Below are positions 14,762-57,920 of a stretch of 64,000 bases of DNA, one piece after another. The notes beneath the pieces were generated by a model. It saw only the letters and a program-made list of their open reading frames with translations, was not told the DNA's origin and searched no databases. The DNA lies in the IMG/VR virus record IMGVR_UViG_3300023278_002893, positions 186,001-250,000 of that record; one strand, written 5' to 3'. How positions within the stretch are numbered: position 1 is the first letter of the stretch; each line of letters opens with the position of its first letter. Position numbers and translations under genes: made by a program.

Positions 14762-15344
14762 TAATTTCAGACCCCCTCTCATCCAATCTTTGCCATCCAA
14801 TTTCCTCCGCAAGATCGCAAACGCTGAGAAAAAACTCATCCAAAGTACCGTTGTTCTCGATGATCTTGTAGTAGTCTGTGTAGTCCTGCATCGATGTCTC
14901 ACTAGAATGATTGACGCCGACAGTAACCCCACTTCCTTCCCGGGTCACCTTGACTACAACACCACCTACTTTTTTTATTTTTTCTGCTTCGTTCGGATAA
15001 CGCACATCTGAAATAACAAACCTACTAAAACCCTGCGCTCTAAGTCGAGGGATAGTAATATTAAGAACCGTATCAATCCAAATGTCAGGATAAATCTCCC
15101 GCATCTTCTCACCCAATCCCTGCATAATCTCTCGAGGTGTAAGATTGTATCTGGGATCCACTTTCTCTTTGACGGAAACAGGACCGTAACACTGCTCGTA
15201 CGAAAGTCCAAAAAGACTACTTGCTGTACTTTTTAGAGCATCGGCAAACGCTACCCTTTTAACCCCAGGACGTTCTTCCAGGTACTCTGCCGCCGTATCT
15301 TTACCCACCTGGGCAGTAACTCCTAATCCTAAAATATCAATCAT
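14754..15344 (-). CDS. Deoxynucleoside monophosphate kinase (T4 gp1-like)
   Basis: GKDTAA P-loop, FADALK, PREIMQ.LG, ISDVRYPNE, HSSE. Confidence 0.88.
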   Translation of the reverse strand: MIDILGLGVTAQVGKDTAAEYLEERPGVKRVAFADALKSTASSLFGLSYEQCYGPVSVKEKVDPRYNLTPREIMQGLGEKMREIYPDIWIDTVLNITIPRLRAQGFSRFVISDVRYPNEAEKIKKVGGVVVKVTREGSGVTVGVNHSSETSMQDYTDYYKIIENNGTLDEFFLSVCDLAEEIGWQRLDERGSEISG

Positions 15345-22470: not shown

Positions 22471-22827
22471 TTATGCGTACTTTATCTTTATTCCGGTTAT
22501 TAGACTTAACCAGCGCCTAACTCCCTCCATACCTGCTTCCCACACAGCGGCAGCTACGTCCCTACGTCCCGTCTGCTCATATACCTCATACATTAGGTTA
22601 TCCACCCGAGACAGCTCTATCAGGAGGATCTTTTGAATCTCTTCTAGTTTTTCCTTATCGAAATTACAAAGGAATGCTATCTCTAGAACTCCTTGGATAA
22701 ATTCCAATCTCATCTCTAACTGATGGACGGGATCTAGTAAGTTTGACACAAGTACTCCCCCCACCTCCCCGCTCCTATAAGTAAAATTCGTGTATTCCTT
22801 GATTATACGGATCGTCACTAATATCAC
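22471..22827 (-). CDS. Hypothetical helical protein
   Basis: ORF track; start uncertain. Confidence 0.45.
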   Translation of the reverse strand: MILVTIRIIKEYTNFTYRSGEVGGVLVSNLLDPVHQLEMRLEFIQGVLEIAFLCNFDKEKLEEIQKILLIELSRVDNLMYEVYEQTGRRDVAAAVWEAGMEGVRRWLSLITGIKIKYA

Positions 22828-23155
22828 AAATCTTAAAATCCTTAGACTTGGAATTAGACTCTACAATTACATATCCGTCAATTAAATGAATTAGAATATC
22901 TATACCATCTTCTGTTTCTTCTAGAAAACCAACAGAGCTGCAAATTTGATGGGCTTTGTCGTACTTCATAATACCTTTATCCCAAAAGAGAAGTTCGACA
23001 TCGTCTAAACAAAGCATAGTGAGAAGTTCTTGTCCTAGATTTTCCATGCCTACTAATAGAATCTTCTTGCCCCTGAAATCCTCTTTACCGTATGCACTAC
23101 GCACAGCTCCTCGAAGAAAGTTAAATATCTTAGTCGCATTTATTGTCATTGTCAA
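22775..23155 (-). CDS. Truncated, degenerate Leu/Phe/Val-dehydrogenase-like Rossmann domain
   Basis: GAVRSAYGKEDFRGKKILLVGMENLGQEL resembles the NAD-binding segment, with an altered glycine motif. Confidence 0.45.
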   Translation of the reverse strand: MTMTINATKIFNFLRGAVRSAYGKEDFRGKKILLVGMENLGQELLTMLCLDDVELLFWDKGIMKYDKAHQICSSVGFLEETEDGIDILIHLIDGYVIVESNSKSKDFKICDISDDPYNQGIHEFYL

Positions 23156-23816
23156 GTTCCACGGATTTACCTTTACGCAGGTTGTCTTCTGCCCAAAGAG
23201 GTTGAAGATTAGTATAATGACATACTATGTGGAGTTGCTTTTCATCTGCTAAATCAAAAGATGATAAGGGTCTAATATGATCGATATGCCATTCGCCATA
23301 ATTTTCCCAGGACATTCCCGGTTGAAATTTAGACTCCAGATAGGATTTTAGGTTTTCTATACTGCAGCCTAGGTACTCATTTAAATTTTTGTCTTTTCGG
23401 ATATCTTTTAAAGCAGATCTTAGCCTAGATCTCATTGTAACTGCGATACGAAAATTGATATCGTTTTTGAACTTATACCTACGATACTCGTTAGATCGTT
23501 TTCGTACATGTTCTTTATTTTCTTTTAGCCACGCACGGTTGTATTCTTTAACGTGATTAGAATTTTTTGCTCTCCATCTTTTCAAACGTTCCTTATTTTC
23601 TATCTTGTGTTTAGTAAGGGAAGTTTGTGTGTATTGTTTTACTTTTTCGGGATTTTTCTTTCGCCATTCTGCTTGGTATTTTGAATTTATTCCTCTCCAT
23701 TTCTTATTACGAGATAATTCTGTTTGTTTTGTTCTTTTCATAATATTCTTTGCGGTGGATTTTATAACACTCCCTACACCAACTCGATAAACTATCTTTA
23801 GCGGTTTTAGCCACAT
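23130..23816 (-). CDS. HNH homing endonuclease, paralog of 17123..17686
   Basis: LESKFQPGMSW.N.GEWHIDH...HYTNLQPLWA shared. Confidence 0.85.
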   Translation of the reverse strand: MWLKPLKIVYRVGVGSVIKSTAKNIMKRTKQTELSRNKKWRGINSKYQAEWRKKNPEKVKQYTQTSLTKHKIENKERLKRWRAKNSNHVKEYNRAWLKENKEHVRKRSNEYRRYKFKNDINFRIAVTMRSRLRSALKDIRKDKNLNEYLGCSIENLKSYLESKFQPGMSWENYGEWHIDHIRPLSSFDLADEKQLHIVCHYTNLQPLWAEDNLRKGKSVELDNDNKCD

Positions 23817-23851
23817 AAAAATAATCTACAGATTTAGAAATTTTACATCTT

Positions 23852-24490
23852 CTACAGGTTTTCGTCATCAAACTTTGGATTATCATTTAAAAGTTCAGTA
23901 TTCCAGTACGCTACATCCAAGAAATTCACCCACTCCTTGTGAGGAACCATTCCCAAAGGGATACTAATTGTTGGGTGCCACTTAGGCATGGATGGAGCGC
24001 TTAGCAATTTCCAGCCCATCTGACGAAGAGTTCTATCTCCCTTCTTACCATTACATTTGAAGCACGATGCTACGATATTGTCCCAGGTAGTTTTACCGCC
24101 CTTAGATCTAGGAATAACATGATCCAAATTAAGGTCGGCCCTAGTTGGGGAAATACCACAGTACTGGCATTGCCAATTGTCCCGTTCAAAGATGTTCTTT
24201 CTGCTAAACCTGACGTGTCTTTTGGGCAGTTTGTCATAAAGTGTTAGCACGATGACTCTCGGGATCTTGATGTTTATAGAGGGGGAGGAAATGAGTTCGG
24301 CAGAACTAACCTCAACCATCTGCTGAGAAACATCTTGCCAATCATTGAAATTATATGCCTGATAACTATCGGGGTCAATGGCTTTGGCGTGTCCTTGGTA
24401 GAGCAAGTTTATAGCTCTCTTTACAGAACATACCTGTATAGCCAACCAGCTCCGATTCAAAACCAAGGTATTGCCATTAAGTTTGCCCAT
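23852..24490 (-). CDS. HNH endonuclease (McrA-like)
   Basis: TLVLN, IFERD..QCQYC, LDHVIPRSKGG..W.N...C..CN. Confidence 0.9.
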   Translation of the reverse strand: MGKLNGNTLVLNRSWLAIQVCSVKRAINLLYQGHAKAIDPDSYQAYNFNDWQDVSQQMVEVSSAELISSPSINIKIPRVIVLTLYDKLPKRHVRFSRKNIFERDNWQCQYCGISPTRADLNLDHVIPRSKGGKTTWDNIVASCFKCNGKKGDRTLRQMGWKLLSAPSMPKWHPTISIPLGMVPHKEWVNFLDVAYWNTELLNDNPKFDDENL

Positions 24491-24536
24491 AACAAATTGC
24501 CCCTTTGTCTTACAACTATATGATATTATTTCTATA

Positions 24537-24896
24537 TTAGCAAGCGTTAGATCCTTTCCACCCTAACAAACCCTCTATGGCAGCGGTCGATCCCTCTGTA
24601 ATAAATGATAATTGCGACACTGCGTCATAATCCATTGTGAAGGTACAACCCGCTCCTAGTTTGATATCATCTCCCGGAACAAAGCTCACCGCCGTTGTGG
24701 CATCCCCATCATTTACTCTGAAATAAATAGCTACCGAGCTGCTCTTATTTATAAGATGTAGCCTACGGGCAGGTGGGGTTATGGTAAAACCACTTGCCGT
24801 TCCTGTGATATCGCCTTCGAAGTATTTTACTTCATCGAACCCAAGTTCAAGGACAGCATCTACTAATCCTCCGCTATGGGCTATTTGAGTAGTCAT
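24537..24896 (-). CDS. Small beta-rich probable virion protein
   Basis: 119 aa after the adhesin genes. Confidence 0.45.
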   Translation of the reverse strand: MTTQIAHSGGLVDAVLELGFDEVKYFEGDITGTASGFTITPPARRLHLINKSSSVAIYFRVNDGDATTAVSFVPGDDIKLGAGCTFTMDYDAVSQLSFITEGSTAAIEGLLGWKGSNAC

Positions 24897-24920
24897 TAAT
24901 TTTTACCTCTCTTGTACCCG

Positions 24921-26177
24921 TTATGCTCTAGTTATTCTTCTGCGCCGCCAATCGATTTCAATCTTGATCCGGGTGTCTAGAGTTGCATCCTCTCCGTCCA
25001 TGGAAGCATTCAATCTCTGGTCTCCACTATCTGCATCCCCTGGTCCCATGCATAAACCTATCGGAACACTTGCGTCATAATCAGGACGATTGAAATACTC
25101 CTGCATGACCTCAGTTATACCGCTACTGGAATGAGTAACGATACCGGAGATAGTTAGGAAAGAGGGCATACTGTCCCGCGAAACAGATCCAAAAGGAGCA
25201 ACATTCTCAGTGACTCCGTCCTCATGAATTTGGGTGGGTAGATCAACGTCGATGGGGTAATTAACGTTATTGAACGCCTCCGGTATTCCGTAGGTGGAGG
25301 GAGAACCGTTAGGATATAAAGACGCCCCCGTGGTGTTTGCCTTGAACCCCCAAAGCACGTGAGTGCCTGCGGAGGTATTACCAGTCCAGTTCTTTGCAAG
25401 AACAACTGCGTATCTGGTGCCCGAGACAACATCTGCTGTAATACCTGAACCAGTAGTATGATCAAAACTGATTACAGACTCGCTGGTAGCGATAGTAGAC
25501 ATAGCTTGGTAGTCTCCCAAACCAATCGATCCACCATCAATATCTGGTCTATCATCTGTTCCATCTTGTGAGAGAGTGTTGTAGTATTCAGGTCTCATTG
25601 CGTCTCCCGGATCAAACGCACTTCCCCCTTCTACCTTCCAAACAACCAAATTAGTAGTCGCTACAGTCCCCGTAGCGTCTGCTGTGAATGTCTGACACAA
25701 ACTATCGGAAGTTAGCCAGAGATCATCATTTTCTGAATGAGTTACTGACCCATCTACAGCGATACCCGTCGCGGTGATTCCTAATGTAGCAGCCCCGGCG
25801 GTCTCACACTGAAACTGAAAATCCAGATGAGAGTTAGGGTGTCCGATCCACTGGGCTGTTCCAGAACCGGGTTGAGTCCATTTTCCATCATCAGCAAGAA
25901 GACTGGTATCTGCGGAAAATGCGGTGGAATCTACACGACTAGCAACGAACTTTATTCGAGCACCGGTCACCACCGCAGTTCTAGGAACAGGAGTACCAGA
26001 TACAGCTTCCAAAACAATTAGGATGGAGTGTCTCGCGAAAGGAGTTTTAGTAGCCCTCCCCCAGGCTACATTATCGGTATATAAGAATTCCGAATTTGCG
26101 AAATCTCCATTACTACGCGTGTCTGCATTTCCAGCTATATGGTTCATTTGGTTTGTCTGATATATGGTTGTTCTCAT
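24921..26177 (-). CDS. Probable virion adhesin/decoration protein (DNRLRE/CBM96-like segments)
   Basis: P..AVVTGARIKF and LLADDGKWT; T/G/S/D-rich. Confidence 0.5.
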   Translation of the reverse strand: MRTTIYQTNQMNHIAGNADTRSNGDFANSEFLYTDNVAWGRATKTPFARHSILIVLEAVSGTPVPRTAVVTGARIKFVASRVDSTAFSADTSLLADDGKWTQPGSGTAQWIGHPNSHLDFQFQCETAGAATLGITATGIAVDGSVTHSENDDLWLTSDSLCQTFTADATGTVATTNLVVWKVEGGSAFDPGDAMRPEYYNTLSQDGTDDRPDIDGGSIGLGDYQAMSTIATSESVISFDHTTGSGITADVVSGTRYAVVLAKNWTGNTSAGTHVLWGFKANTTGASLYPNGSPSTYGIPEAFNNVNYPIDVDLPTQIHEDGVTENVAPFGSVSRDSMPSFLTISGIVTHSSSGITEVMQEYFNRPDYDASVPIGLCMGPGDADSGDQRLNASMDGEDATLDTRIKIEIDWRRRRITRA

Positions 26178-26815
26178 TAGGGAGTCTTCTCGATGTATAA
26201 TACTTTTCGACCATCGGGCAGAAGATCAGGAGCATCGATGAGACGAAGACCACGGGCAGCAAAATCCAGATTCTTTACAGCGAGTTCTGAAGCCTGCATC
26301 TTCTTGAATGCGTCATTGGCGCCCTCGGGCATTTCGAATCGTCTAAAATGCATTGTGACCATCTTCTTTTCAGTGGGGATCTTGGTCTCTAATAGGTATT
26401 GAAATATTTCAAAAGTCCGATTCATCCAAGCATCAGAACCAGGATTACGTAAGAAAGGAGTTACAAGTGCGGATACTTGAATATCATTACCATTTCTTGA
26501 GATGAGTTTGATGCGTATAATGCTCAACCCGCCGATCAACTTACTATCCTCGAAAACACCAAAAAACAGAGAAGGGAAATCCCCTTCACCAATCTGAACT
26601 CTTGAGAATCCTCGACTTCCTTTTTTGTTGGGATGGGAATCACATCTTATATCCCGATGCACCCCTCGATTTTTTATCATGCCTGACAACCTCGCAACCG
26701 CTCTGGATTCCATCTCATCTTTATTCACAAACACAAGATTGCCTACATTGAAGGTTCTGATTTTCACTTCTTCCCTGGGAAGCCTGGGCACACTATTATC
26801 AATCAGTCGCGTCAT
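26177..26815 (-). CDS. Unknown protein, paralog of 56137..56733
   Basis: Shared FGV..., GN...VSA..TP..RN, LET and F.P motifs. Confidence 0.6.
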   Translation of the reverse strand: MTRLIDNSVPRLPREEVKIRTFNVGNLVFVNKDEMESRAVARLSGMIKNRGVHRDIRCDSHPNKKGSRGFSRVQIGEGDFPSLFFGVFEDSKLIGGLSIIRIKLISRNGNDIQVSALVTPFLRNPGSDAWMNRTFEIFQYLLETKIPTEKKMVTMHFRRFEMPEGANDAFKKMQASELAVKNLDFAARGLRLIDAPDLLPDGRKVLYIEKTP

Positions 26816-26824
26816 GGTATCTCC

Positions 26825-29800
26825 CTATATCAACGTCAGACTAAACTCGTCTGCTGTTCCGCTCTGTGTTGTGGTCTCCATCCAGACAAAGGAGTCAACT
26901 GGAATATTTGGATTGTCGAAACTCGTGATGACCTCTCCAGTATTTCCGCTGTGAGTTGTAGTTCCTCCGGTGATGACTTCTGTTCCTACTCCCGATCTGG
27001 TAGGATCGTGTCTGACCGTCCAGGTAGCTCCGAGTGCTCCCGTTCCTCTGATGGAACCGATCAGCTTCTGAACTGTTCTGGCTGCTGTAGTGTAGAAGAA
27101 GAAAACATCCTCTCCGTTGAAGAGGTTCTCTACTCCAAGATTGTAAGGACCACCTACTGTATCCACATAGTTCTTCGTAGCGAGATCGTCTGAAGCGACG
27201 GGATCGGCTCCACTTACTGTCGCACTGAATCCCCGAGTTCCATCGGCAAGAGCATACTGAGTATGATCATCATCGGGAAGACCGGTGAGTAATCCATGAT
27301 CTGTAATTCCTGCTCCACCTATTACTACTCCCCCTGGGAAGGAAGAGGGAGAAACTCCTCTCAGATCTGTATTGGCTATAATAGTCCAATTATTACTAGA
27401 CTGACGTCTAACGGTCAGACGTGATAGTAACCAACCCACTCCTGCATAGTCTCTGGGGATAGTATATAGAGCGGTGTTCTCAACATCATTGATAGCATTG
27501 GTGTTGTTGTTATAGCCGTCACCGGGGAGATTCAAAAACAGCTTGGTATCCGAATCATTCTCTGCTACTGCTCCCCACAAGACTACATTGAATCTGTCAT
27601 TTGCTCCGATGGACGAACCATCGCTATATGCTGTAATCTCTGACAGAGACTGGATAGTAGTATAGGGAGTAGTAAAGTCATTGAATACATAGATTAAATC
27701 AGCTCCAGAGGTATCGATGGTAGGTGTAGAATGAGTATGGAGCTGATAGATACTACCCGCTGCGACCTGAATAGTAATATCATCTGGAGTTGGTCCGGTA
27801 TCTACCGTAGTAGTCAGGGCTGTTCCAGTTTGCCACTCTGCGTATTGTGATCTGATTCTCTCACTGATAGCGTGGATATGACCAATACCTCCTCGTGAGA
27901 GAGGTTCGTGATTATGATCTGTATATGCGTGGAGTTTCAATGGTCCATCGGTTTGAACCGTGGGTTCTGTTTGAACTATTACTCTTGCTACTCTCGCATG
28001 TTCAGCTGCTGGGAATCCGCTGGTATTAGCAGTTAGAACAAGAGACCCTGCGCTTTCCAGTAGATATACCCAGTTTTCTTGTGGATTAATATCCGTTCCC
28101 GCAGCAGTTAGAATAACCGAATCCGGGACTGAGTGGGTGATATTTACCCCACTGATTTGAACAGTGTTGGTGCTCCCTCCGATTCTATCCAGAGTGAAAG
28201 TGATGTCTGCTCCATCGGAAGATACTGTGTATGTATTATCAGTCTCAGCGATGGTTCCATCATAAGCAAACTCTAAGTTTTCAAGGAAGGTGGTGTTACC
28301 ACTTAGTTCATTTAGGAAGGGAGTATTGATGGGGCTGACTAATATACTACCATTACTTACCCCAGAGGCAACAGCGAGCCCCATGAAGATTACTCTTTCA
28401 GTTCCTGTTGGTAGAACCTTTGTAAGTTCTCCTGGGGTATTGGAAACATAAAGTCTATCGCCTGGTGAAAATGCAGAAGTATCCACATCACGCACCAAAC
28501 CAAAGGTGGTTACATATCCATTACTATTGTTACTGATATCTTCAGTAGCAAGTCCGAAAGCTCCTGATGTGGGATCGGTTGCATCTGCTAATCCGACAAG
28601 GGGTCTGCCTGCCTGAATCCCTAGAATATTCACTGCGGTTCCGTCAGTTATAGTAGAACCGGTTGTATTCCGAGTCCTAACTAATTGCTCTTGACCTACC
28701 TGGAGATTTACACTACCTCCAGGCATACCAAGATTCAGAGTTCCATCATCATCGTTCCAGGATAGTCTACCCTCTGTCGGGGTAATACCATTAACCAGAT
28801 TGAAGTCTATCCATCCGACATCACCAATCCGATTATCCGACATATCTAGCTCACCTTGTAGGGTGCCGGATACACCCTGAATGTGGGTTCCTGCTATATC
28901 TCCTGCTACCGTCAGATTCTGAGCAATCCCCATTCCCGGAGTAGATCCTACAATTCCTGAGATTGTTACTCTTTCCACCCCTCCCCCAGTAAAACCGAGC
29001 ACTGCGTTACCCTTACGATACATCCCCGTGTTGTGCTGCTGCTTGAATGAAAAAGGAGCATCACTCGCATTCCCATCCCCCGCATGAACTCGCTGAACGT
29101 CTTCGATCTTGAAGGAGTTACATTCCAAATGTGAACCAAGGACGGGAGATAGATCTTGAACTATCTCGGTTAGAAATGTTCCAGATGCGGCGAGGAACTC
29201 ATCTCTGAATCCAGAAACTGTAATGTTTTGTCCCAATTCAGAGACACTTATTCCATCAGATCCTGAAATAATAACGTCACCCGTAATCGCATTTACTGAA
29301 TCAACATCAGAACTTTCGACAGCGTCTATCTGAGATTGAAGGGAACCAGAGGTGGCTACAAATTCATCTCTAAAACCGCTTATAGTTACAGTATCACTTC
29401 CTGAAATAACGGTATTGCCATCCAGTCCAAGTATCGCATCATTCTCATTTTTGGCGTATCGAGAGTGGTGGGCGTCTTCGGCTTCAGCGTGTGTTGTTAT
29501 ATCTGTGTCTATTTCAGAAGATAGGGAACCAGATGCCGCAACGAACTCTGCATAGAATCCACTAATAGTATCTACATTGGATCCAGAGACAACGGTTATT
29601 CCATCATCTCCTACAAGAGCGTTGGGAGTACTACCTGACCCTCCCCCGCCACCAGTGGAGGAAATAGTAATAGAGTTAGCCCCAGAAACTACTACAATGT
29701 TACTACCTGCAATAATAGCATCATTCTCATCCTTAGTATATCGGATGTGGTGCGCAGAAGTATCTGATGCGTGAGTGTTGATATCAGAATCAATCTCAGC

Positions 29801-31540
29801 AGCCAGAGTTCCGCTTGCGCTAACGAACTCGGTATAGAATCCAGACACGGTAATGGTTGAGGAACCAGAAATAACTGTAATCCCATCTGCACCTACAATA
29901 GCAGTCGAAGCGGCGTCTATTGAACTCTGTAAAGCACCTGATGCACTAACAAACTCATCTCTAAACCCGCCTATTGCTATAGCACTGGCACCACTAATAA
30001 CGGTTATTCCATTTGAACCTACAAGTGGAAGGCCAAAACTAGAACTAATGGCAATAGCGGGGGATTCTCCAACATAGTTTTCGGTTGGGTTCCCCGCTCC
30101 GGCGCTGTAGAGAGCGTCGATTTCATCTAAGGTCAGCGCTTTGTCCCAGAATAGAATTTGGTCCAGAAGACCACTAAACGGACGGTCGCCTCCACCACCG
30201 TTGGGTTGATTTCCAATACATGTGTTGATTGAAGCCGAAGTGGGAACAAACCCTGTCTTTGAGTCAGTCGCCACTTCGACACCGTCGAGATAAATTTTGT
30301 AAGTACTTCCGTTGTACCACGTGATTAAGTGGTACCATGTTCCAGTACTTAAAGCGGAAACAGATGCCTGCACCTGTGTTCCAGTACCTAACGTACCTGT
30401 TGTTAGTCTAAAATTAATGGTCGTTGAGTTAGGTATCCCAGCCATAAACACATGGTCCGCGGTACTAGTACCGTCCGCTTTGGACCAAATACGAGTATCA
30501 CCGGCAAATGAGTCAGAATTAAACCAACCACTGATTGAGAATTCCGATACATTTGGAACATCTAATGTTCCTATATTAAATCTAGTACCACCTGCCCCGT
30601 CAAAGTCGGCGGCCTGCCCGAAACCTGATTTCCCTGCAGTGTATGTAACCCCTCCCGCGATAGTACCGTCTTGGGAGCCGAAGGAATCGTCTGTATTATC
30701 TTCGAAATCGTAACCATTTGTTATATTCTGGTCGCCGGTAGTTGTTGTAACCGAGATCGACGCGTCTAATGCCTTGATCTTTTTAAACTCAAAAACGGGA
30801 CCTGTTTTTTGAAAAAATACGTCCTCGCCTAGGATTCCTATATTAGTACCAGATACAGCCAGGGATCCTGAAGCCGCTAGGAACTCCGCCCGGAAACCCG
30901 AAACCGTAGTTTCGCCCGCGGTGGGAGTTCCTGAGATAACAGTAATTCCATCTACACCCACCATCGCGTCCGAGACCGTACCGCCCCCACCTCCACCACC
31001 GCCCGCAGTGGAAGATATGGTAATAATGTTAGTTCCTGACACGACTGTAACATTACTGCCTGCCACGATAGCGTCGTTTTCGTCCTTAGTGTATCTGACG
31101 TGGTGCGCACTTGCGTCCGCGGCGTGTGTAATGATATCACCATCTATTTCCGAAGACAGGGTTCCAGAAGCGGCAACAAACTCTGTTCTAAAACCAGAAA
31201 CTGTGATTGTCTGGGATGCTGTCGAAACGACATTTCCATCAGTACCGTCTATTACAACCGCACCTACTACACTGTTTACGCTATCTACAGCACCTCCGCC
31301 CCCACCAACACCGCTAGTACTAATTTCTACAAAATTAGTTCCCGTAGTAACTACAATACCAGAGCCTGCGGTAATTAGTCCCTCTCCCGGAAAATAACTA
31401 TTGAAAGTTGTAACCAATTCGGTATCGTCACGCCCACCAGTTCCTGTAATAACTACCTCACCGAAAAATTCATTGAACTCTAGCTCACTGAGAAAATCCT
31501 CGTCCACTGATTGATGTTCTCTTATTCTAGTCTTTACCAT
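26825..31540 (-). CDS. Large tail-fibre/adhesin with internal repeats and a LamG (ConA-like) domain
   Basis: Repeats GFR.EF.AASG and H.....AHH.RY.K.ENDAI; LamG motifs FSISGWF, GTWYHLITWYNG...YLDG, FSGLLDQI; DHGLLTGL.DDDHTQY. Confidence 0.8.
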   Translation of the reverse strand: MVKTRIREHQSVDEDFLSELEFNEFFGEVVITGTGGRDDTELVTTFNSYFPGEGLITAGSGIVVTTGTNFVEISTSGVGGGGGAVDSVNSVVGAVVIDGTDGNVVSTASQTITVSGFRTEFVAASGTLSSEIDGDIITHAADASAHHVRYTKDENDAIVAGSNVTVVSGTNIITISSTAGGGGGGGGTVSDAMVGVDGITVISGTPTAGETTVSGFRAEFLAASGSLAVSGTNIGILGEDVFFQKTGPVFEFKKIKALDASISVTTTTGDQNITNGYDFEDNTDDSFGSQDGTIAGGVTYTAGKSGFGQAADFDGAGGTRFNIGTLDVPNVSEFSISGWFNSDSFAGDTRIWSKADGTSTADHVFMAGIPNSTTINFRLTTGTLGTGTQVQASVSALSTGTWYHLITWYNGSTYKIYLDGVEVATDSKTGFVPTSASINTCIGNQPNGGGGDRPFSGLLDQILFWDKALTLDEIDALYSAGAGNPTENYVGESPAIAISSSFGLPLVGSNGITVISGASAIAIGGFRDEFVSASGALQSSIDAASTAIVGADGITVISGSSTITVSGFYTEFVSASGTLAAEIDSDINTHASDTSAHHIRYTKDENDAIIAGSNIVVVSGANSITISSTGGGGGSGSTPNALVGDDGITVVSGSNVDTISGFYAEFVAASGSLSSEIDTDITTHAEAEDAHHSRYAKNENDAILGLDGNTVISGSDTVTISGFRDEFVATSGSLQSQIDAVESSDVDSVNAITGDVIISGSDGISVSELGQNITVSGFRDEFLAASGTFLTEIVQDLSPVLGSHLECNSFKIEDVQRVHAGDGNASDAPFSFKQQHNTGMYRKGNAVLGFTGGGVERVTISGIVGSTPGMGIAQNLTVAGDIAGTHIQGVSGTLQGELDMSDNRIGDVGWIDFNLVNGITPTEGRLSWNDDDGTLNLGMPGGSVNLQVGQEQLVRTRNTTGSTITDGTAVNILGIQAGRPLVGLADATDPTSGAFGLATEDISNNSNGYVTTFGLVRDVDTSAFSPGDRLYVSNTPGELTKVLPTGTERVIFMGLAVASGVSNGSILVSPINTPFLNELSGNTTFLENLEFAYDGTIAETDNTYTVSSDGADITFTLDRIGGSTNTVQISGVNITHSVPDSVILTAAGTDINPQENWVYLLESAGSLVLTANTSGFPAAEHARVARVIVQTEPTVQTDGPLKLHAYTDHNHEPLSRGGIGHIHAISERIRSQYAEWQTGTALTTTVDTGPTPDDITIQVAAGSIYQLHTHSTPTIDTSGADLIYVFNDFTTPYTTIQSLSEITAYSDGSSIGANDRFNVVLWGAVAENDSDTKLFLNLPGDGYNNNTNAINDVENTALYTIPRDYAGVGWLLSRLTVRRQSSNNWTIIANTDLRGVSPSSFPGGVVIGGAGITDHGLLTGLPDDDHTQYALADGTRGFSATVSGADPVASDDLATKNYVDTVGGPYNLGVENLFNGEDVFFFYTTAARTVQKLIGSIRGTGALGATWTVRHDPTRSGVGTEVITGGTTTHSGNTGEVITSFDNPNIPVDSFVWMETTTQSGTADEFSLTLI

Positions 31541-31552
31541 TGTTATCCCGTA

Positions 31553-31897
31553 TTACCCGACCTTCAGAAATTGTAGAATATCGCTATTCCTGATATCATA
31601 TACAAAGGATAGATTGCTGACGGCGGAAACGAAGAAAACATCTTTATCCACAGTCCCGCTGCTACCTGGAAGTTGGAGTATCCCATTTGTAAATGTTTGA
31701 GTATCGTCAATGAACTCTTGTACGCCAGAAACAGAAACTGGGCCTCCTACGGAAGTCCAGCCTACTCCTGGGGCATTAATGTCTATGGTAGTGCCTGCCG
31801 GGACAACGTCTCCTGTTCTAATCAAGAACAGTTTCTCGGTGGTTATACTACCACCGCTGCTGCTACTAACAGGGCAGGTGATTCCCAGCTCTGCCAT
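31553..31897 (-). CDS. Probable virion/fibre-associated protein
   Basis: FTNGILQ..G motif; upstream of the fibre gene. Confidence 0.5.
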   Translation of the reverse strand: MAELGITCPVSSSSGGSITTEKLFLIRTGDVVPAGTTIDINAPGVGWTSVGGPVSVSGVQEFIDDTQTFTNGILQLPGSSGTVDKDVFFVSAVSNLSFVYDIRNSDILQFLKVG

Positions 31898-32403
31898 ATT
31901 ATCTTATGTCCGTCTTGGTGTCCTGGTTATTGCTACCAACACTAGTTACCGTCGCTGTGCTCCCGGTGATTACCTGGAAGTTTCTGAGAATGAACATTAT
32001 GTAGTCTCCTTTTTTTCGTATTTACAATACTCCAAGGAAGTGCTGCAGACCTTAGACATGTTCTGCAGCTTCGGTACTGCAGTATCTAGGGGCGCCCCAC
32101 ATCCTCCCGACTTAACGGCTCTTCTCCCACAACAACCTCGAGTGAAGTTCCACTTAAAATACTTACAATCTTCTTTATCGTAGTTCTTGATAACTGTAAC
32201 CATTACATAGCCTCATAGTCTGTTATAGATAAGAAATCATCCTCATCCATAATTAAAGTCATGCCGTTAAATAAATGAACCATTACTTGACGTACCGGAG
32301 TACCACCACAATTCCAAGTGTAGTATCCCCAATCCGCTATTACCTGATCCAATAATCTAATCAAAGGGCGTTCCCCCCTCTCCGCGCAGGGCCCAAGTAC
32401 GCG

Positions 32404-33039
32404 CTATTGTATTGAGTTGGTAATCATTGTTAGAGTGCCAATATAACCACCACCGACGCTGCTATTAAGCATAATCTCTCGCGGCGGAGTTAACCACCCC
32501 GTATTGTCAGTAAGCGCAATCTTGGCTTCCATAAGACATAATAAAAGATCTGTTTTTCTATCAGGACCTAACGCCAGTCTATCATAACGCCATTGCCACG
32601 AAGAATGACCAGCCGACATTGCTGCCCAGTAAAACCTTGCGGGAGTCAGAGACTTCCCAGAACTAGCCTTTTGGATCTCGAAGAACTGACGTGCTATCAT
32701 CTCAGCTCTGGAATAACTATCCTCGTTTCCTTGGCTTATACGGAAGAGTATCATCGCAGTCGCCAGATAGACGTCATATCCCTGAGGTTGTTTGATGTCC
32801 CCGCTGATAAAAATTACAGCGAAGTCCATGGTGCTATCTACCTTCTCTTTGAGAAGATCGGGATCACAGCCTTCCTTGGATACCACATAACTGTCACCTT
32901 CCGAACAAGCCGCATAAAGAGCAACCACCTCATTGTCTTGATCCGCCAAAGATCCCATAAGCATGGGAGTGGGGGCGGTAGTCTTACACGCAGAAAGCAA
33001 CAGCACACAGGCTGTTAGTAAAGAAACTATCCATTTCAT
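32404..33039 (-). CDS. Lipoprotein
   Basis: Signal MKWIVSLLTACVLLLSAC with lipobox LSAC. Confidence 0.75.
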   Translation of the reverse strand: MKWIVSLLTACVLLLSACKTTAPTPMLMGSLADQDNEVVALYAACSEGDSYVVSKEGCDPDLLKEKVDSTMDFAVIFISGDIKQPQGYDVYLATAMILFRISQGNEDSYSRAEMIARQFFEIQKASSGKSLTPARFYWAAMSAGHSSWQWRYDRLALGPDRKTDLLLCLMEAKIALTDNTGWLTPPREIMLNSSVGGGYIGTLTMITNSIQ

Positions 33040-33047
33040 AACGGCTC

Positions 33048-33782
33048 CTAAATTATGGTGTCAATTATTTCTAGTAATTCTTCGAAGCCCTCAGAGTTAA
33101 ATAAAGACCAATCCCGCATGGCGGGGAAAAGATCCTTCAATGCCTCCAAAGCCTCGGCAAGATTGGTATCTACCTGAGGGTTATGGGATACCTTCTGTAT
33201 CTCCTGCGTTATTAGGGTTAGATTGGCTTGTAGTACTTCCTTGTTCCGCACGCAGCGGGTTTTAAGATACTCTCCATCTACGTGAGGATACTTCTCTTGC
33301 ATAAACTCAAAGCTAGTAATAAAGGAAAAATCATTAAAGATTATTTCTAACTCCGCAATGGATTCAGCATTCCAATTGTTCTCAGCGCAAAGATACCCAT
33401 AGTGCTTATCTAGCTCTTCATCCATCTCAAACTGCAATCGCATAATGTTAGGGTCGATGGGTGGGTATTTAATCTGATCATATTCCTGTGAGAGCGCAAT
33501 GCGTTTCCAAATATTAAATCCCACCTCACCGAGACTGAGAATAGGTACAGCAATCGCCGCTGGGGGTATAAATGTAAGAACAGCTCTTAGTGCAGAAACA
33601 CTCCTTAGTATATTGTCATCTGACAACATTCGAGGTTTGATCACTATATATTTAGGATCAACTTTCTGATCTTCTTTTTTAGTAGCCTTAAGTATCGCTA
33701 AGGCGGCTCCTAACCAATCTATCATTACAAGTCGCCTCCAAAAGCGTTTTGCAAATTCAAAGGATTTACTCTTCGGTTCCAA
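33048..33782 (-). CDS. Hypothetical protein
   Basis: ORF track, 244 aa. Confidence 0.55.
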   Translation of the reverse strand: MEPKSKSFEFAKRFWRRLVMIDWLGAALAILKATKKEDQKVDPKYIVIKPRMLSDDNILRSVSALRAVLTFIPPAAIAVPILSLGEVGFNIWKRIALSQEYDQIKYPPIDPNIMRLQFEMDEELDKHYGYLCAENNWNAESIAELEIIFNDFSFITSFEFMQEKYPHVDGEYLKTRCVRNKEVLQANLTLITQEIQKVSHNPQVDTNLAEALEALKDLFPAMRDWSLFNSEGFEELLEIIDTII

Positions 33783-53116: not shown

Positions 53117-53145
53117 ATTATATTTATTTTGGGGGGTGATGTCAA
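53117..53145 (-). promoter_or_regulatory. Consensus sigma70 promoter
   Basis: TTGACA-17-TATAAT. Confidence 0.85.
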
Positions 53146-54365: not shown

Positions 54366-56132
54366 TCAAGGCTGATCTGTGACAACACTGTTAATACCCG
54401 TAGCTGTGGCCCCTGTACCCGCGGCAATATCTATAATACCGGCGTAGTCAGTTCCCACATTTGGAAAATCATCTCCGGGCTTCCAATAGTGTATCAAGCT
54501 CGCACTACTTGTATAAGTCCCAGAATCTGTCGTGAGGTCGTAATCAAAACCTCCCGAAACTAGAGTCGGATACTGCCCCGGCTCTAGCGCTATATCCCAT
54601 ACCCCTATATGTCCTAAACTACCAGACCAAGCCGCTAGCGATGGTGCTGTGTCCTCTAAGAGGTCTCCTACGCGGAGTTGACGTCCACCCGTTGGCTCGT
54701 TCATGTTGCCAGTTCCGGAAAATAATAAGGTTTGGTCCGTGACAAGTAAGCCCTGATCGTATGCGATCAGGTTGGTCCCGTCCCAGACGCATGAGAAATT
54801 CCTCCACTGATTATGCTTCTGGATCTTATTGAAACGCGTTATACGTAATCTACGACCTAGAGAGTTTCCCAATTCTATGACAAGCTCTTCTTCATATTTG
54901 GAGTTTTCTAGTTTGGCCGCCCATATCAATATCTCACTTCTAGGGGTGCTCCCCTTTAGGTGTAATAACGTTCTATGACTATCAATTGCTGCTTGTGGGA
55001 CAAACAGGGTGGGTTTCAACCAAAAACCAAACGTCCATGCATTCCCGATACCTATTTCTTGATTGGGGGAACTTTCTAATCTATCACTAGATCCCCCAAA
55101 TTCTGTGGCTACTGAATTAGTTACCCCTACTCCCCCAGTAGTTAAACTAACCGCCCATTCTTGTGTCGCTGTCCCCGAAAGAGTAGAAGTTACAACAACT
55201 TTGAAATCCTGGCTCGGTTGTTGGCTTACATGTGGTATCCAAGCAACTGACCCTGTTGTGGGGGATATAGTCGCCCCCTCCGGATTAGTTTCGAATGTAT
55301 AAGTCAAAGTCAGGTCTTCGTCGCTTCGTGCATCCACTTCATAGGTGTAAGACTGAGACGTTAGACCTGAAGTAGTTGGTATCCCTGAAATTGTTGGATC
55401 GTGGTCATTGTATTGTACTATTAGGCGGAAACCACCCCCCGCGCGATCTTCTGCATCAAAGAAAACCCGTTCTTCGTCCGACCCGTCCCCGCTACTGCTA
55501 TTATACCAATCCAGGGCAAATGCGATTCCTGAGATTGTCGGGTTTGTACCCCGCCACGCTTCTAAGTTCTCAGCAATGGCATTTGTAGGGGCGGCTGAAA
55601 GTTCAAAGTCTGGTGAATAGTCCGGATCACCGATTGATCCTGAAGTACCCGTCAAGAAGTCACCACTGTCGTAAGTTATTGTACCTAATTCCGCCCCGCC
55701 GAAAACGCGTGATCCGCTAATAGTGTCTGATAACTCACCCGTAGGGAAAGGAAAATCAGTCGAACTTGTATAAGCCCCCCATCCTCCGGAAGTTCCTGAA
55801 AGGGGGACAGTCCAAACACCATCATCTTCGAGCATAAACACACGGAAACTATTATCAGTATCTGTTATAACTGGATTCAGGAAGAACGTGGTCTTCCAAT
55901 TAAGCTTTGCTTTAACATATGACGACCTGTTGGGGATGATTGATAAATCATAATAAAGAAATACCGCATCCGTTGGCTCAAATCCCTTACCTCCAACAGC
56001 CCCTACCCAGAGCTGCTCGGGGGATTCCGGGAGAGGCCAATGCGTCTCTTCATCGACATTGACGCGTACATCCCCCAAAAATCCATGACTATCACTTTCG
56101 GATACTGCGAAACTAGATTCCCGTAATACCAT
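54366..56132 (-). CDS. Probable virion adhesin: DNRLRE-like N-domain, Ig-like domain, LamG domain
   Basis: IP....VKAKLNW, MLEDDGVWT; PTISG.P...YTYEV.A...PEGATI...TG.V.W.P; WTFGFWLKP, WRNFSCVWDG. Confidence 0.7.
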   Translation of the reverse strand: MVLRESSFAVSESDSHGFLGDVRVNVDEETHWPLPESPEQLWVGAVGGKGFEPTDAVFLYYDLSIIPNRSSYVKAKLNWKTTFFLNPVITDTDNSFRVFMLEDDGVWTVPLSGTSGGWGAYTSSTDFPFPTGELSDTISGSRVFGGAELGTITYDSGDFLTGTSGSIGDPDYSPDFELSAAPTNAIAENLEAWRGTNPTISGIAFALDWYNSSSGDGSDEERVFFDAEDRAGGGFRLIVQYNDHDPTISGIPTTSGLTSQSYTYEVDARSDEDLTLTYTFETNPEGATISPTTGSVAWIPHVSQQPSQDFKVVVTSTLSGTATQEWAVSLTTGGVGVTNSVATEFGGSSDRLESSPNQEIGIGNAWTFGFWLKPTLFVPQAAIDSHRTLLHLKGSTPRSEILIWAAKLENSKYEEELVIELGNSLGRRLRITRFNKIQKHNQWRNFSCVWDGTNLIAYDQGLLVTDQTLLFSGTGNMNEPTGGRQLRVGDLLEDTAPSLAAWSGSLGHIGVWDIALEPGQYPTLVSGGFDYDLTTDSGTYTSSASLIHYWKPGDDFPNVGTDYAGIIDIAAGTGATATGINSVVTDQP

Positions 56133-56136
56133 TTAG

Positions 56137-56733
56137 TTAAGGGTTGCGGCGGATAGATACGTGCGTGCCATCTCCTAATTTAGTATGTTGGAAATTTCCA
56201 ACTAGTGGCGTAAGAATGTCAGATACTCTGTCTGAACGCCATTGATGTCCAAACTCCGTAGGAAAATCCCACTGCATAAGTCTGAATATTTTATTTCCGC
56301 CCTTAAATTCTAGATCCGTCTCAAGAAATGCCTTCATTAGGAAAGCAAAGGATCTATTAGCGGTATGTCCTGGTATATTGCGAATACCCGGAGTTATCAT
56401 AGCAGATACTTCCATTAAATTCCCATCATCGGATTCTGTACGTACATTATAAAGATTACATGTACCCAGAAGCACATCTCGTTTATTGTTCTGATCTAAG
56501 GTATAGACTCCAAAATTGACTACACCCAAGTCATCGTCATAAGTAGGGGAATCTCTTCTACAGAGGAAGACGTCAGGTTTATCTGCGAGTTCAATTGCTC
56601 GGAATATAACCCTTCTGAGAATTTTTATCGCCTGATGACGCCGATCTCTAGTCATATCCCTAAAATGAACGAGTCTTATATCCGCGCCGCGGGGATTAGT
56701 AATTGTAAAAGGCTTTATGGCAGGTAATTTCAT
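56137..56733 (-). CDS. Unknown protein, paralog of 26177..26815
   Basis: DGNLMEVSAMITPGIRN versus NGNDIQVSALVTPFLRN. Confidence 0.6.
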   Translation of the reverse strand: MKLPAIKPFTITNPRGADIRLVHFRDMTRDRRHQAIKILRRVIFRAIELADKPDVFLCRRDSPTYDDDLGVVNFGVYTLDQNNKRDVLLGTCNLYNVRTESDDGNLMEVSAMITPGIRNIPGHTANRSFAFLMKAFLETDLEFKGGNKIFRLMQWDFPTEFGHQWRSDRVSDILTPLVGNFQHTKLGDGTHVSIRRNP

Positions 56734-57891: not shown

Positions 57892-57920
57892 ATTATAAGT
57901 TCTGCCGCGCGTAATGTCAA
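57892..57920 (-). promoter_or_regulatory. Consensus sigma70 promoter
   Basis: TTGACA-17-TATAAT. Confidence 0.85.

What the first reader, a model, noticed from the sequence alone, without database searches (positions are those of the whole stretch)
24921..26815. Duplicated two-gene cassette: unknown ~200-aa protein + adhesin (second copy at 54366-56733)
Seen: 26177..26815 and 56137..56733 share FGV(F/Y)...L(I/L)G...GN...VSA..TP..RN...LET...F.P. Each lies directly upstream of a T/G/S-rich protein, and those partners share N-terminal motifs (PRTAVVTGARIKF/PNRSSYVKAKLNW; LLADDGKWT/MLEDDGVWT) but differ downstream (the second has Ig + LamG). The copies are 30 kb apart. Inference: a modular receptor-binding or decoration unit with a dedicated chaperone, adaptor or modifying enzyme (the strand pattern is loosely GNAT-like).
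Basis: partly seen in the sequence, partly recalled or inferred. Interest (0 to 1): 0.6.

Follow-up and report, generated by a model that had tools for sequence, protein, structure and literature searches.

The report
Paired GNAT-fold protein and phage adhesin
An uncultivated 298-kb jumbo phage carries two old, diverged copies of a tightly coupled gene pair, a small protein with a predicted acyltransferase (GNAT) fold followed by a lectin-like tail-fibre or adhesin protein, and the same pair recurs next to tail-fibre genes in other uncultivated phages.

Summary
Both cassettes are intact minus-strand ORF pairs: A1 (212 aa) with A2 (418 aa), and B1 (198 aa) with B2 (588 aa), 30 kb apart. A1 and B1 are clearly homologous (hhalign 97.8%, E 7.6e-13). 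Leave-one-out profiles find only the other copy among 1145 genome ORFs. A2 and B2 share only an N-terminal stretch of about 120-160 aa. That similarity is significant pairwise (z 14.7 against shuffles) but weak profile-to-profile.

The two copies belong to separate subfamilies, each with orthologues in other viral contigs. This is an ancient paralogy, not a recent duplication. In all 10 distinct loci with readable DNA, the small gene abuts or overlaps a partner gene, usually beside tail-fibre genes. One partner locus lacks the small gene.

No Pfam, PHROG, NCBIfam or PADLOC model matches the small protein. Its AlphaFold model has GNAT topology, and an exhaustive PDB comparison returns almost only GNAT-superfamily chains (Z up to 8.3-8.5). 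An invariant Cys and conserved Asp, Ser and Arg suggest catalysis. Against a syntenic relative the pair is 30-33% identical while flanking genes are 57-76%.

Best reading: an acyltransferase-type factor acting on its adhesin partner. Enzyme activity, binding and virion location remain untested.

The parts
26177..26815 (-). A1: 212-aa basic protein with a predicted GNAT fold (A-type). It has an invariant Cys58 and a VSALVTPFLRNPGS segment at the b4-a3 junction.
   Evidence: ORF. AF2 model pLDDT 75, pTM 0.76. Foldseek returns 61 PDB hits at E<=1e-3, and every hit in the printed list is a GNAT acetyltransferase. VIA Z 8.5 and 8.3 to PA3270 and PseH. ESM Atlas model matches GNAT clusters at TM 0.56/0.64. 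Conservation.
24921..26177 (-). A2: 418-aa acidic, T/G/S-rich partner. It overlaps the A1 stop codon by one base.
   Evidence: Orthologues 22-56% identical sit downstream of A1 orthologues. The model is poor (pLDDT 56.6).
25524..26000 (-). A2 residues about 60-218: the N-terminal region shared with B2. It includes the conserved L-x-DDG-x-W-T loop, which is modelled with low confidence.
   Evidence: pLDDT is below 50 for residues 79-119.
25320..25799 (-). A2 residues 127-286: a beta-sandwich resembling lectin/CBM modules of phage baseplate and tail-tip proteins.
   Evidence: VIA wide search: Z 9.0 to a PBCV-1 capsid protein, 8.9 to the phi812 baseplate and 7.6 to the Bxb1 tail tip, plus many CBMs. 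CBM96 hints from the ESM Atlas. The evidence is weak.
56137..56733 (-). B1: 198-aa basic paralogue of A1 (B-type). Its closest relatives are P0013, P0014 and P0012.
54366..56132 (-). B2: 588-aa acidic, T/G/S-rich partner. Its start codon lies 4 nt after the B1 stop, with no evident ribosome-binding site.
   Evidence: The orthologue L015 4128-5960 aligns over the full length (E 1e-10).
55428..55988 (-). B2 residues about 49-235: the N-terminal domain shared with A2 and with B-type orthologues.
55158..55397 (-). B2 residues 246-325: a probable Ig-like (He_PIG) domain.
   Evidence: Pfam E 1.8e-4, 22.4 bits against a 24-bit cut-off.
54579..55088 (-). B2 residues about 349-518: a probable LamG / concanavalin-A-like lectin domain.
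   Evidence: Laminin_G_3 E 5.5e-5, 23.8 bits against a 27.6-bit cut-off, over profile positions 4-147 of 151. The orthologue scores 42 bits.
26825..31540 (-). Context: a 1571-aa repeat-rich tail-fibre-like protein with a LamG domain, directly upstream of A1. Its last 150 aa or so form a domain found just upstream of the small gene in every A-type locus.
   Evidence: Laminin_G_3 E 1.7e-24. Matches to the L007, L010, L012 and L013 upstream proteins.
24537..24896 (-). Context: a 119-aa T/G/S-rich protein downstream of A2. It is 71% identical to its L010 counterpart and is not duplicated at cassette B.
57892..57920 (-). A perfect sigma-70 consensus promoter upstream of the gene run 126 aa, 133 aa, 104 aa, B1, B2.
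   Evidence: It is one of only two such sites in the 297.7-kb genome.
53117..53145 (-). The second perfect sigma-70 consensus promoter, which marks the downstream end of the unit holding cassette B.

Best explanation
The two cassettes are anciently diverged paralogues (A-type and B-type) of one two-gene module found in the tail-fibre loci of uncultivated tailed phages. The first gene encodes a basic protein of about 200 aa with no detectable sequence family and a GNAT (acyl-CoA N-acyltransferase superfamily) fold. The second gene is translationally coupled to it. It encodes an acidic, T/G/S-rich beta-sandwich protein with a conserved N-terminal domain and exchangeable distal lectin-type domains: a CBM-like sandwich in A2, and Ig plus LamG in B2.

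Shown:
- homology of both gene pairs;
- the GNAT-like predicted fold;
- strict gene adjacency across 10 loci;
- tail-fibre neighbourhood in relatives;
- joint fast divergence of the pair relative to its flanking genes.

Inferred:
- The small protein works in the infected cell as a dedicated acyl-transfer enzyme that covalently modifies or matures the N-terminal domain of its partner before assembly. It would use the invariant Cys58 together with the conserved Asp79, Ser115 and Arg/Lys210. This would follow the logic of HlyC/CdiC, GNAT-fold acyltransferases encoded beside the toxin or adhesin they acylate.
- The partner is a virion-surface glycan-binding fibre or decoration protein.
- Carrying two modules gives the phage two adhesins with different distal binding domains.
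For: Homology.

Fold:
- The AF2 model (pLDDT 75, pTM 0.76) has the canonical GNAT element order.
- Foldseek returns 61 PDB hits at E<=1e-3, and every listed hit is a GNAT.
- The exhaustive VIA search of 48,161 chains gives a top 50 made up almost entirely of GNAT-superfamily chains, including FemA and LasI (Z up to 8.3, about 150 aa aligned at 3.7-3.9 A).
- The independent ESMFold model also matches GNAT clusters.

Enzyme-like conservation: Cys58 is present in 17/17 members, an acidic residue at position 79 in 15/17, Ser115 in 13/17, Pro120 in 16/17 and Arg/Lys210 in 17/17. A V-x-P-x-x-R-x-x-G-like segment sits at the b4-a3 junction, where GNATs bind the CoA pyrophosphate.

Composition: the small proteins are basic and not T/G/S-rich, unlike the fibre, the partners and the 119-aa protein. 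That fits a cytoplasmic factor rather than a fibre part.

Linkage: the partner follows the small gene, with overlap or a gap of at most 4 nt, in window A, window B, L007, L008, L010, L011, L012, L013, L014 and L015/L016.

Co-divergence:
- Between the window and L010, flanking genes are 57-76% identical but A1 is 30% and A2 is 33%.
- The similarity matrices of the two proteins correlate across 10 loci (Mantel r 0.97, p 4e-4).

Tail-fibre context: Mu gp48 baseplate and fibre genes in L007. A tail-fibre PHROG hit (8e-24) sits directly upstream of the B-type pair in L015. A fibre C-terminal domain lies upstream of all A-type pairs.

Precedent: RtxC/ApxIC has a GNAT-like fold without detectable sequence homology (PMC8339906). 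CdiC lipidates the receptor-binding domain of the adjacent CdiA to improve target recognition (PMC8510554).
Against: - No member of the family matches any Pfam GNAT model, even at E 10, or any PDB sequence.
- Structural Z scores are moderate (at most 8.5) and rest on predicted models built from shallow alignments.
- The canonical Q/R-x-x-G-x-G/A motif is degenerate. R-x-x-G occurs in 3 of 17 members and the Gly in about 10 of 17.
- No acceptor residue is conserved in the partner. The Lys of DDGKWT is Val, Ile or Arg in other members.
- One relative (L019/L021, 56% identical to A2) has the partner directly after the fibre C-terminal protein with no small gene between them.
- Cassette B lies among replication and nucleotide-metabolism genes and behind a perfect sigma-70 promoter, which is unusual for a late structural gene.
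- The A2 model is poor, so the lectin/adhesin assignment is weak.
- The complex prediction could not be run.
- The Mantel correlation is expected for any two linked genes that share a history.
Confidence: 0.45

Rival explanations
1. The GNAT-fold protein is no longer an enzyme. It is a dedicated assembly chaperone or adaptor that binds the conserved N-terminal domain of its partner. It either folds or oligomerises the partner, or it docks the partner onto the virion as a small structural subunit.
For: - Start/stop coupling suggests equimolar production.
- The pair co-diverges like the fibre/chaperone cassettes of other phages.
- The CoA-loop motif is degenerate and no sequence-level GNAT signal exists.
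- It is established knowledge that the acyl-CoA N-acyltransferase superfamily includes non-catalytic binders such as ornithine decarboxylase antizyme.
- A P0012 relative sits right after head-tail connector genes in a small phage's morphogenesis block.
Against: - An invariant lone Cys plus conserved Asp, Ser and Arg points to catalysis more than to a scaffold.
- The basic, non-T/G/S composition differs from all neighbouring structural proteins.
- Known tail-fibre chaperones lie downstream of the fibre gene and bind its C-terminal tip, not upstream with an N-terminal target.
- No PHROG or Pfam chaperone family matches.
Confidence: 0.3
2. The small protein is an active GNAT whose substrate is not the partner. 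Candidates include a host surface glycan or nucleotide sugar, a polyamine, or a host protein. On this view it merely travels with the adhesin as a host-range cassette.
For: - The best structural matches include sugar-nucleotide and small-molecule GNATs such as PseH, FdhC and SpeG.
- Phage GNATs that act on host proteins are known, for example Rac (reviewed in PMC7824862).
- Cassette B sits behind a sigma-70 consensus promoter among non-structural genes.
- One partner exists without an adjacent small gene.
Against: - Adjacency is strict, with overlapping or abutting coding regions in all 10 loci and in both subfamilies.
- The small protein diverges in step with the partner while the flanking genes stay conserved.
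- The part of the partner that stays conserved between the A and B types is the N-terminal domain, the region most likely to be recognised by the conserved core of the small protein.
Confidence: 0.15
3. The small protein serves the upstream long fibre, as a chaperone or modifier of its conserved C-terminal domain of about 150 aa. The downstream gene would then be only a neighbour.
For: Every A-type locus has a protein ending in that fibre C-terminal domain just upstream of the small gene. Phage fibre chaperones usually follow the fibre gene.
Against: - Cassette B in the window has no fibre upstream but keeps the downstream partner.
- In L007 a DUF433 gene separates the fibre C-terminal protein from the small gene.
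- Between the window and L010 the fibre C-terminus is 62% identical while the small protein is only 30%, tracking the partner at 33%.
Confidence: 0.05
4. The similarity is a composition artefact, or the pair is a GNAT toxin-antitoxin or defence-related module unrelated to the virion.
For: The partners are compositionally biased. Partner profile-profile scores are weak. GNAT toxins do exist.
Against: - Small-protein homology is robust (E 7.6e-13).
- The partner similarity survives shuffling of the same composition (z 14.7).
- No PADLOC hit was found.
- The partner is a 400-600-aa beta-rich lectin-type protein, not a small RHH antitoxin.
- The neighbourhood in relatives consists of tail fibres.
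Confidence: 0.02

Closest known systems
Toxin-activating acyltransferases (RtxC/HlyC/ApxIC) and CdiC with their substrates HlyA and CdiA
   Same: Both are small proteins of about 170-210 aa with a GNAT-like fold and no detectable sequence similarity to canonical GNATs (PMC8339906). Both are encoded beside the large surface-acting protein they serve. CdiC lipidates the receptor-binding domain of an adhesin-like effector to improve target recognition (PMC8510554). That is the logic proposed here.
   Different: No HlyC-family Pfam hit was found. There is no conserved His/Ser pair; the invariant residue here is a Cys. ApxIC is not among the top 50 structural matches. No conserved acceptor Lys exists in the partner. 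The setting is a phage, the acyl donor is unknown, and no modification has been shown.
Canonical GNAT N-acetyltransferases of the RimL/RimJ, PA3270 and PseH type (Acetyltransf_3-like)
   Same: The predicted fold and element order agree, with about 150 residues superposing at 3.7-3.9 A (Z 7.5-8.5). A V-x-P-x-x-R-x-x-G-like segment sits at the b4-a3 junction.
   Different: No sequence-level match to any GNAT Pfam model or PDB chain was found. The pyrophosphate-loop motif is degenerate. The a1-a2 loop is long and carries an invariant Cys. The family is tied to an adhesin gene.
Tail-fibre and chaperone cassettes (lambda Stf-Tfa, Mu S-U, T4 gp37-gp38)
   Same: Each is a two-gene, co-diverging and exchangeable module at tail-fibre loci, with a small accessory protein dedicated to one fibre protein. 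The pair evolves faster than its flanking genes.
   Different: Here the accessory gene is upstream, not downstream. The conserved part of the fibre protein is N-terminal, not the receptor-binding tip. The accessory protein has a GNAT fold. No PHROG or Pfam Tfa or gp38 match was found.
Phage-encoded enzymes that modify their own virion proteins (for example glycosyltransferases beside mycobacteriophage capsid and tail genes; recalled from my own knowledge, not checked here)
   Same: The modifying enzyme is encoded next to the structural gene it decorates.
   Different: The chemistry and the fold differ. No modification has been shown here.

Membership tests
GNAT / acyl-CoA N-acyltransferase superfamily (fold level) | Mixed alpha/beta fold with the order b1-a1-a2-b2-b3-b4-a3-b5-a4-b6-b7 | tested here: met
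   DSSP on the AF2 model gives E21-31, H37-48, H72-77, E83-89, E92-108, E111-121, H128-143, E154-163, H166-172, E190-198 and E204-210. The top 50 of 48,161 PDB representatives are almost entirely GNAT-superfamily chains. The ESM model agrees. This rests on a predicted structure only.
GNAT / acyl-CoA N-acyltransferase superfamily (fold level) | Sequence match to a GNAT profile (Pfam Acetyltransf_1, _3 and related models) | tested here: not met
   None of the 17 family members hit any acetyltransferase model, even at E 10. The profile search against PDB sequences gave 0 hits.
GNAT / acyl-CoA N-acyltransferase superfamily (fold level) | Q/R-x-x-G-x-G/A pyrophosphate-binding loop between b4 and a3 | tested here: inconclusive
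   A1 has R-N-P-G-S-D after V-T-P-F-L. R-x-x-G occurs in 3 of 17 members, the Gly in about 10 of 17, and most A-type members have P-N-P-G-S.
GNAT / acyl-CoA N-acyltransferase superfamily (fold level) | Binds acyl-CoA and transfers the acyl group | not testable with these tools
   This needs biochemistry or a liganded structure.
Toxin-activating acyltransferases (HlyC/RtxC/CdiC) | Match to the HlyC family profile, and conserved catalytic His and Ser | tested here: not met
   No Pfam hit was found. No conserved His exists in the family; the invariant residues are Cys58 and Gly95. ApxIC is absent from the top structural matches.
Toxin-activating acyltransferases (HlyC/RtxC/CdiC) | Encoded beside the protein it acylates | tested here: met
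   The gene adjacency part is met in 10 of 10 loci. Acylation itself was not tested.
Phage tail-fibre assembly chaperones (Tfa, gp38, gp57A) | Profile match, and a position downstream of the fibre gene it serves | tested here: not met
   No PHROG or Pfam match was found. The small gene is upstream of its constant partner.
Laminin_G_3 / concanavalin-A-like lectin domain (B2 C-terminal half) | Pfam PF13385 at or above the gathering score | tested here: inconclusive
   B2 residues 335-588 score 23.8 bits against a 27.6-bit cut-off, over profile positions 4-147 of 151. The orthologue L015 4128-5960 scores 42 bits and aligns with B2 across this region.
He_PIG Ig-like domain (B2 residues 246-325) | Pfam PF05345 at or above the gathering score | tested here: inconclusive
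   22.4 bits against a 24-bit cut-off, E 1.8e-4.
GNAT toxin-antitoxin or known defence systems | Match to PADLOC or TA models, and a small RHH-type antitoxin partner | tested here: not met
   No PADLOC or NCBIfam hits were found. The partner is a 400-600-aa beta-rich protein.

The most novel reading that the evidence does not exclude
A previously unrecognised, sequence-orphan branch of the GNAT superfamily uses an invariant cysteine to acylate, possibly lipidate, the N-terminal domain of the phage's own receptor-binding or decoration protein. On this reading the phage tunes adsorption by post-translational modification. The enzyme and substrate are exchanged together as a host-range cassette, and this jumbo phage runs two such systems in parallel.
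Probability: 0.2. Interest if true: 0.8.

Novelty: new variant of a known kind. Interest (0 to 1): 0.55.

Why it matters
If the small protein really modifies its partner, it would be a phage example of an enzyme that covalently tunes a receptor-binding protein. So far this is described for bacterial RTX toxins and CdiA, not for phage adhesins. It would also add a new lever on host range.

Even on the cautious reading, the work defines a new protein family. About 16 representatives were found among 1.84 billion proteins, and none is annotated. The family has a predicted GNAT fold and is genetically locked to a modular lectin-type fibre protein. The pair behaves as a fast-evolving cassette inside a conserved frame, which is the signature of host-specificity determinants. 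That gives annotators a handle on two 'hypothetical' genes in uncultivated jumbo-phage tail-fibre loci. It also gives experimenters a small, well-defined pair to co-express.

Tried and rejected
There is therefore no computational test of binding.
- IMG/VR scans with single proteins and with subfamily alignments returned only a near-identical 196-kb contig of the same phage.
- tblastn of A2 and of the 119-aa protein against 50,697 GenBank phage records gave no match.
- The genome-contig scan with the partner alignment found no prophage relative. The host therefore remains unknown.
- The metagenome scan added two short contigs of one phage.
- The sequencing-run search listed no run. Read laying was therefore not used, and there is no expression evidence.
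- Searching the L010 source record for a second pair was not possible because the record is not held.
- PHROGs, NCBIfam, PADLOC and Pfam gave nothing for the small proteins or for A2.
- Profile-profile comparison of A-type against B-type partners was weak (E 0.041). An HMM of two B-type partners found nothing. I therefore rest the partner homology on pairwise statistics and say so.
- A toxin-antitoxin or defence reading, and a composition artefact, were considered and rejected.
- A conserved acceptor Lys in the DDGKWT loop was considered and rejected, because the Lys is not conserved.
Full report
**Setting.** The window is bases 186001-250000 of a 297,725-bp IMG/VR virus record that CheckV rates as complete, so this is an uncultivated jumbo phage. 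Almost all genes in the window lie on the minus strand. Two perfect sigma-70 consensus promoters and a Mu gp48 baseplate gene in a related contig point to a tailed phage of a bacterium. No host could be identified.

**The observation.** Both cassettes are intact ORF pairs at the stated coordinates.
- A1 is 26177-26815 (212 aa). A2 is 24921-26177 (418 aa). They share one base in a TAATG stop/start overlap.
- B1 is 56137-56733 (198 aa). B2 is 54366-56132 (588 aa). B2 starts 4 nt after the B1 stop, with no visible ribosome-binding site.

**Homology of the small proteins is secure.**
- BLASTP gives E 2e-7.
- A profile of seven A-type sequences against a profile of four B-type sequences gives hhalign probability 97.8% and E 7.6e-13 over 148 columns, nearly the whole protein.
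- HMMs built without the window's own copy find only the other copy among 1145 ORFs of the genome (E 1.8e-5 and 3.5e-8).

**Homology of the partners is real but limited.**
- BLASTP gives E 1e-8 and 32% identity over 122 aa.
- The two are reciprocal best non-self hits genome-wide (E about 3e-6).
- The Smith-Waterman score is 14.7 sd above 1000 composition-preserving shuffles.
- Profile-based scores are weak (E 6e-4; E 0.041).
- The shared part is the N-terminal region of roughly 60-220 residues. It includes a conserved I/V-P-x-x-S/A segment and the L-x-DDG-x-W-T loop.
- Downstream the proteins differ. A2 continues as a single block of about 400 aa. B2 adds a probable Ig domain (He_PIG, 22.4 bits against a 24-bit cut-off) and a probable LamG domain (23.8 bits against 27.6). 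The B2 orthologue passes for LamG at 42 bits.
- The genome holds exactly two copies of each gene.

**This is not a recent duplication.** A profile search of 1.84 billion representative proteins found only 16 relatives of the small protein at E<=1e-3. They split into two groups:
- an A-type group with A1: P0002, P0003 and P0005-P0010, at 20-57% identity;
- a B-type group with B1: P0013, P0014 and P0012, at 25-35% identity.

Each of the window's copies therefore has closer relatives in other viruses than in its own genome.

**Linkage.** In every locus where DNA could be read, the small gene is followed at once by a homologue of the partner, with overlap or a gap of at most 4 nt.
- A-type loci: L007, L008, L010, L011, L012 and L013.
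- B-type loci: L014 and L015/L016. The L015 partner is a 610-aa LamG protein that aligns with B2 over its full length.

Counting the two window cassettes, that makes 10 of 10 loci. The reverse is not absolute. In L019/L021 a partner 56% identical to A2 follows the fibre C-terminal protein directly, with no small gene between them. Whether that phage encodes the small protein elsewhere is unknown.

**Neighbourhood.**
- Cassette A follows a 1571-aa repeat-rich protein with a LamG domain. It is the fused equivalent of separate fibre genes in L007 (764, 399 and 186 aa) and L010 (179 and 1414 aa).
- Every A-type locus has, just upstream of the small gene, a protein ending in the same fibre C-terminal domain of about 150 aa (37-62% identical).
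- In L015 a protein matching a tail-fibre PHROG (8e-24) lies directly upstream of the B-type pair.
- A more distant member, P0012, sits just after head-tail connector genes in a small phage's morphogenesis block.
- Cassette B in the window is different. It lies among small unknown genes and near UDG, NDK and clamp-loader genes. The 4.7-kb unit holding it is bracketed by the only two perfect TTGACA-17-TATAAT promoters in the whole genome, where shuffles predict 0.25.

**The pair behaves as a cassette.** L010 is syntenic with the window across about 11 kb. Flanking genes are 57-76% identical:

| Gene (window coordinates) | Identity to L010 |
|---|---|
| 33048-33782 | 73% |
| 32404-33039 | 70% |
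| 31553-31897 | 59% |
| fibre N-terminus | 78% |
| fibre C-terminus | 62% |
| A1 (small protein) | 30% |
| A2 (partner) | 33% |
| 119-aa protein | 71% |
| HNH endonuclease | 76% |
| 22775-23155 | 57% |

The two genes have therefore diverged, or been swapped, together inside a conserved frame, as host-specificity determinants do. The small protein tracks the downstream partner, not the upstream fibre C-terminus. Across 10 loci the similarity matrices of the small protein and of the partner N-terminus correlate (Mantel r 0.97, p 4e-4). Shared ancestry of linked genes would give much of that correlation by itself.

**What the small protein is.**
- No Pfam, PHROG, NCBIfam or PADLOC model matches any member, and no PDB sequence does either.
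- The AlphaFold2 model of A1 (four-sequence alignment, pLDDT 75, pTM 0.76) has the element order b1-a1-a2-b2-b3-b4-a3-b5-a4-b6-b7.
- Foldseek finds 61 PDB chains at E<=1e-3, and every listed hit is a GNAT acetyltransferase.
- An exhaustive VIA-align pass over 48,161 representative chains gives a top 50 made up almost entirely of acyl-CoA N-acyltransferase-superfamily members. These include PseH, PA3270, RimL, AAC(6'), FemA and LasI, with Z up to 8.3 and about 150 residues aligned at 3.7-3.9 A. The second look at Foldseek's own hits reaches Z 8.5.
- The ESM Atlas's independent model of the same protein also matches GNAT clusters (TM 0.56/0.64). BFVD matches are viral acetyltransferases.
- The Z scores are only moderate and both models are predictions. 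I therefore call the fold 'GNAT-like, well supported'. Membership at the sequence level is not met.

**Enzyme or not.**
- Family-wide conservation is not only hydrophobic. Cys58, in the long a1-a2 loop that shapes the acceptor site in GNATs, is present in 17 of 17 members. An acidic residue at position 79 occurs in 15 of 17, Ser115 (b4) in 13 of 17, Pro120 (end of b4) in 16 of 17, and Arg/Lys210 (b7) in 17 of 17.
- The segment V-T-P-F-L-R-N-P-G-S lies exactly where GNATs carry V-x-P-x-x-R-x-x-G-x-G. The motif is degenerate across the family, however.
- The small proteins are basic (K+R 15-16%) with ordinary T/G/S content (17%). The fibre, both partners and the 119-aa protein are acidic and 30-35% T/G/S. 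That fits a cytoplasmic factor rather than a fibre subunit.
- I lean towards a catalytic role, and I mark this as an inference.

**What the partner is.**
- The A2 model is poor (pLDDT 56.6).
- Its better-modelled centre (residues 127-286) is a beta-sandwich. Its nearest solved neighbours are a PBCV-1 capsid protein, the phi812 baseplate, the Bxb1, T1 and Sf11 tail tips, and many carbohydrate-binding modules (Z up to 9.0). The ESM Atlas gives CBM96 hints.
- Together with the Ig and LamG domains of B2, the composition and the fibre context, a glycan-binding virion-surface protein is the most reasonable reading. It has not been shown.
- The most conserved stretch shared by A2 and B2, the DDG-x-W loop, is modelled with very low confidence. 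That is compatible with a segment that becomes ordered only on binding something.

**Mechanism and comparison.** The best-fitting known logic is that of the RtxC/HlyC/CdiC acyltransferases. ApxIC has a GNAT-like fold 'despite unidentifiable sequence homology' and lacks the CoA-binding elements (PMC8339906). These enzymes are encoded beside their protein substrate. CdiC lipidates the receptor-binding domain of CdiA to strengthen target recognition (PMC8510554).

The family here is not a member of that group. It has no HlyC profile hit and no conserved His/Ser, and ApxIC is not among its structural neighbours. It also differs from Tfa/gp38-type fibre chaperones in gene order, target region and fold. 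I therefore file it as a new, sequence-orphan variant within the GNAT superfamily that works with an adjacent phage adhesin.

My estimated odds are:
- about 0.45 for the enzyme-on-partner model;
- about 0.30 for a non-catalytic chaperone or adaptor;
- about 0.15 for an enzyme with another substrate;
- about 0.05 for a role serving the upstream fibre;
- about 0.02 for an artefact or a toxin-antitoxin/defence module.

**Limits.** There are no expression data, because no sequencing run was listed. There is no complex prediction, no cultivated relative and no host. All structural statements rest on predicted models built from shallow alignments. Most related loci are short metagenomic contigs.

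Noticed in passing
window 57892-57920 (-) and 53117-53145 (-): These are the only two perfect sigma-70 consensus promoters (TTGACA-17-TATAAT) in the whole 297.7-kb genome, where shuffles predict 0.25. They bracket the 4.7-kb run of genes that contains cassette B. The unit may be early-expressed or moron-like.
   Followed up: partly
window 22775-33782 compared with L010 1-16033: Synteny with a 150-kb metagenomic contig holds across about 11 kb. Flanking genes are 57-76% identical, but the small protein and its partner are only 30-33% identical. L010 also carries three extra genes (188, 977 and 404 aa, the last matching a virion structural PHROG) that are absent at this place in the window.
   Followed up: partly
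window 26825-31540 (-): The 1571-aa fibre-like protein is a fusion of what are separate genes in relatives: 764, 399 and 186 aa in L007, and 179 and 1414 aa in L010. It is full of internal repeats of the type G-I-T-V-I-S-G...S-G-F-R-x-E-F-V-A-A-S-G-x-L.
   Followed up: partly
window 24537-24896 (-): The 119-aa T/G/S-rich protein just after A2 is unusually conserved (71% identical to its L010 counterpart) and matches no family. It may be a structural partner of the fibre module.
   Followed up: partly
window 40994-42310 (-): This actin-like protein matches Pfam Volactin strongly (E 2e-65) and MreB weakly. A cytoskeletal gene in a jumbo phage is worth a separate look.
   Followed up: no
window 36985-37746 (-): The phage encodes an M24 methionine-aminopeptidase-like protein (E 1.5e-49). 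It sits next to an SLT transglycosylase (37733-38476) and an IMPDH/GMP-reductase (38476-39588). N-terminal Met removal could bear on N-terminal acylation, but no link was tested.
   Followed up: no
window 23130-23816, 23852-24490, 46693-47400, 14033-14932 (-): Several HNH-type endonuclease genes are scattered through the window. Two of them lie in tandem right after cassette A and its 119-aa neighbour.
   Followed up: no
L019 61-1475 and L021 61-1859: This relative has the partner gene (56% identical to A2) directly after the fibre C-terminal protein, with no GNAT-fold gene between them. It is the one exception to the linkage.
   Followed up: partly
L007 6706-7041: A DUF433-family gene is inserted between the fibre C-terminal protein and the small GNAT-fold gene in this relative only.
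   Followed up: no
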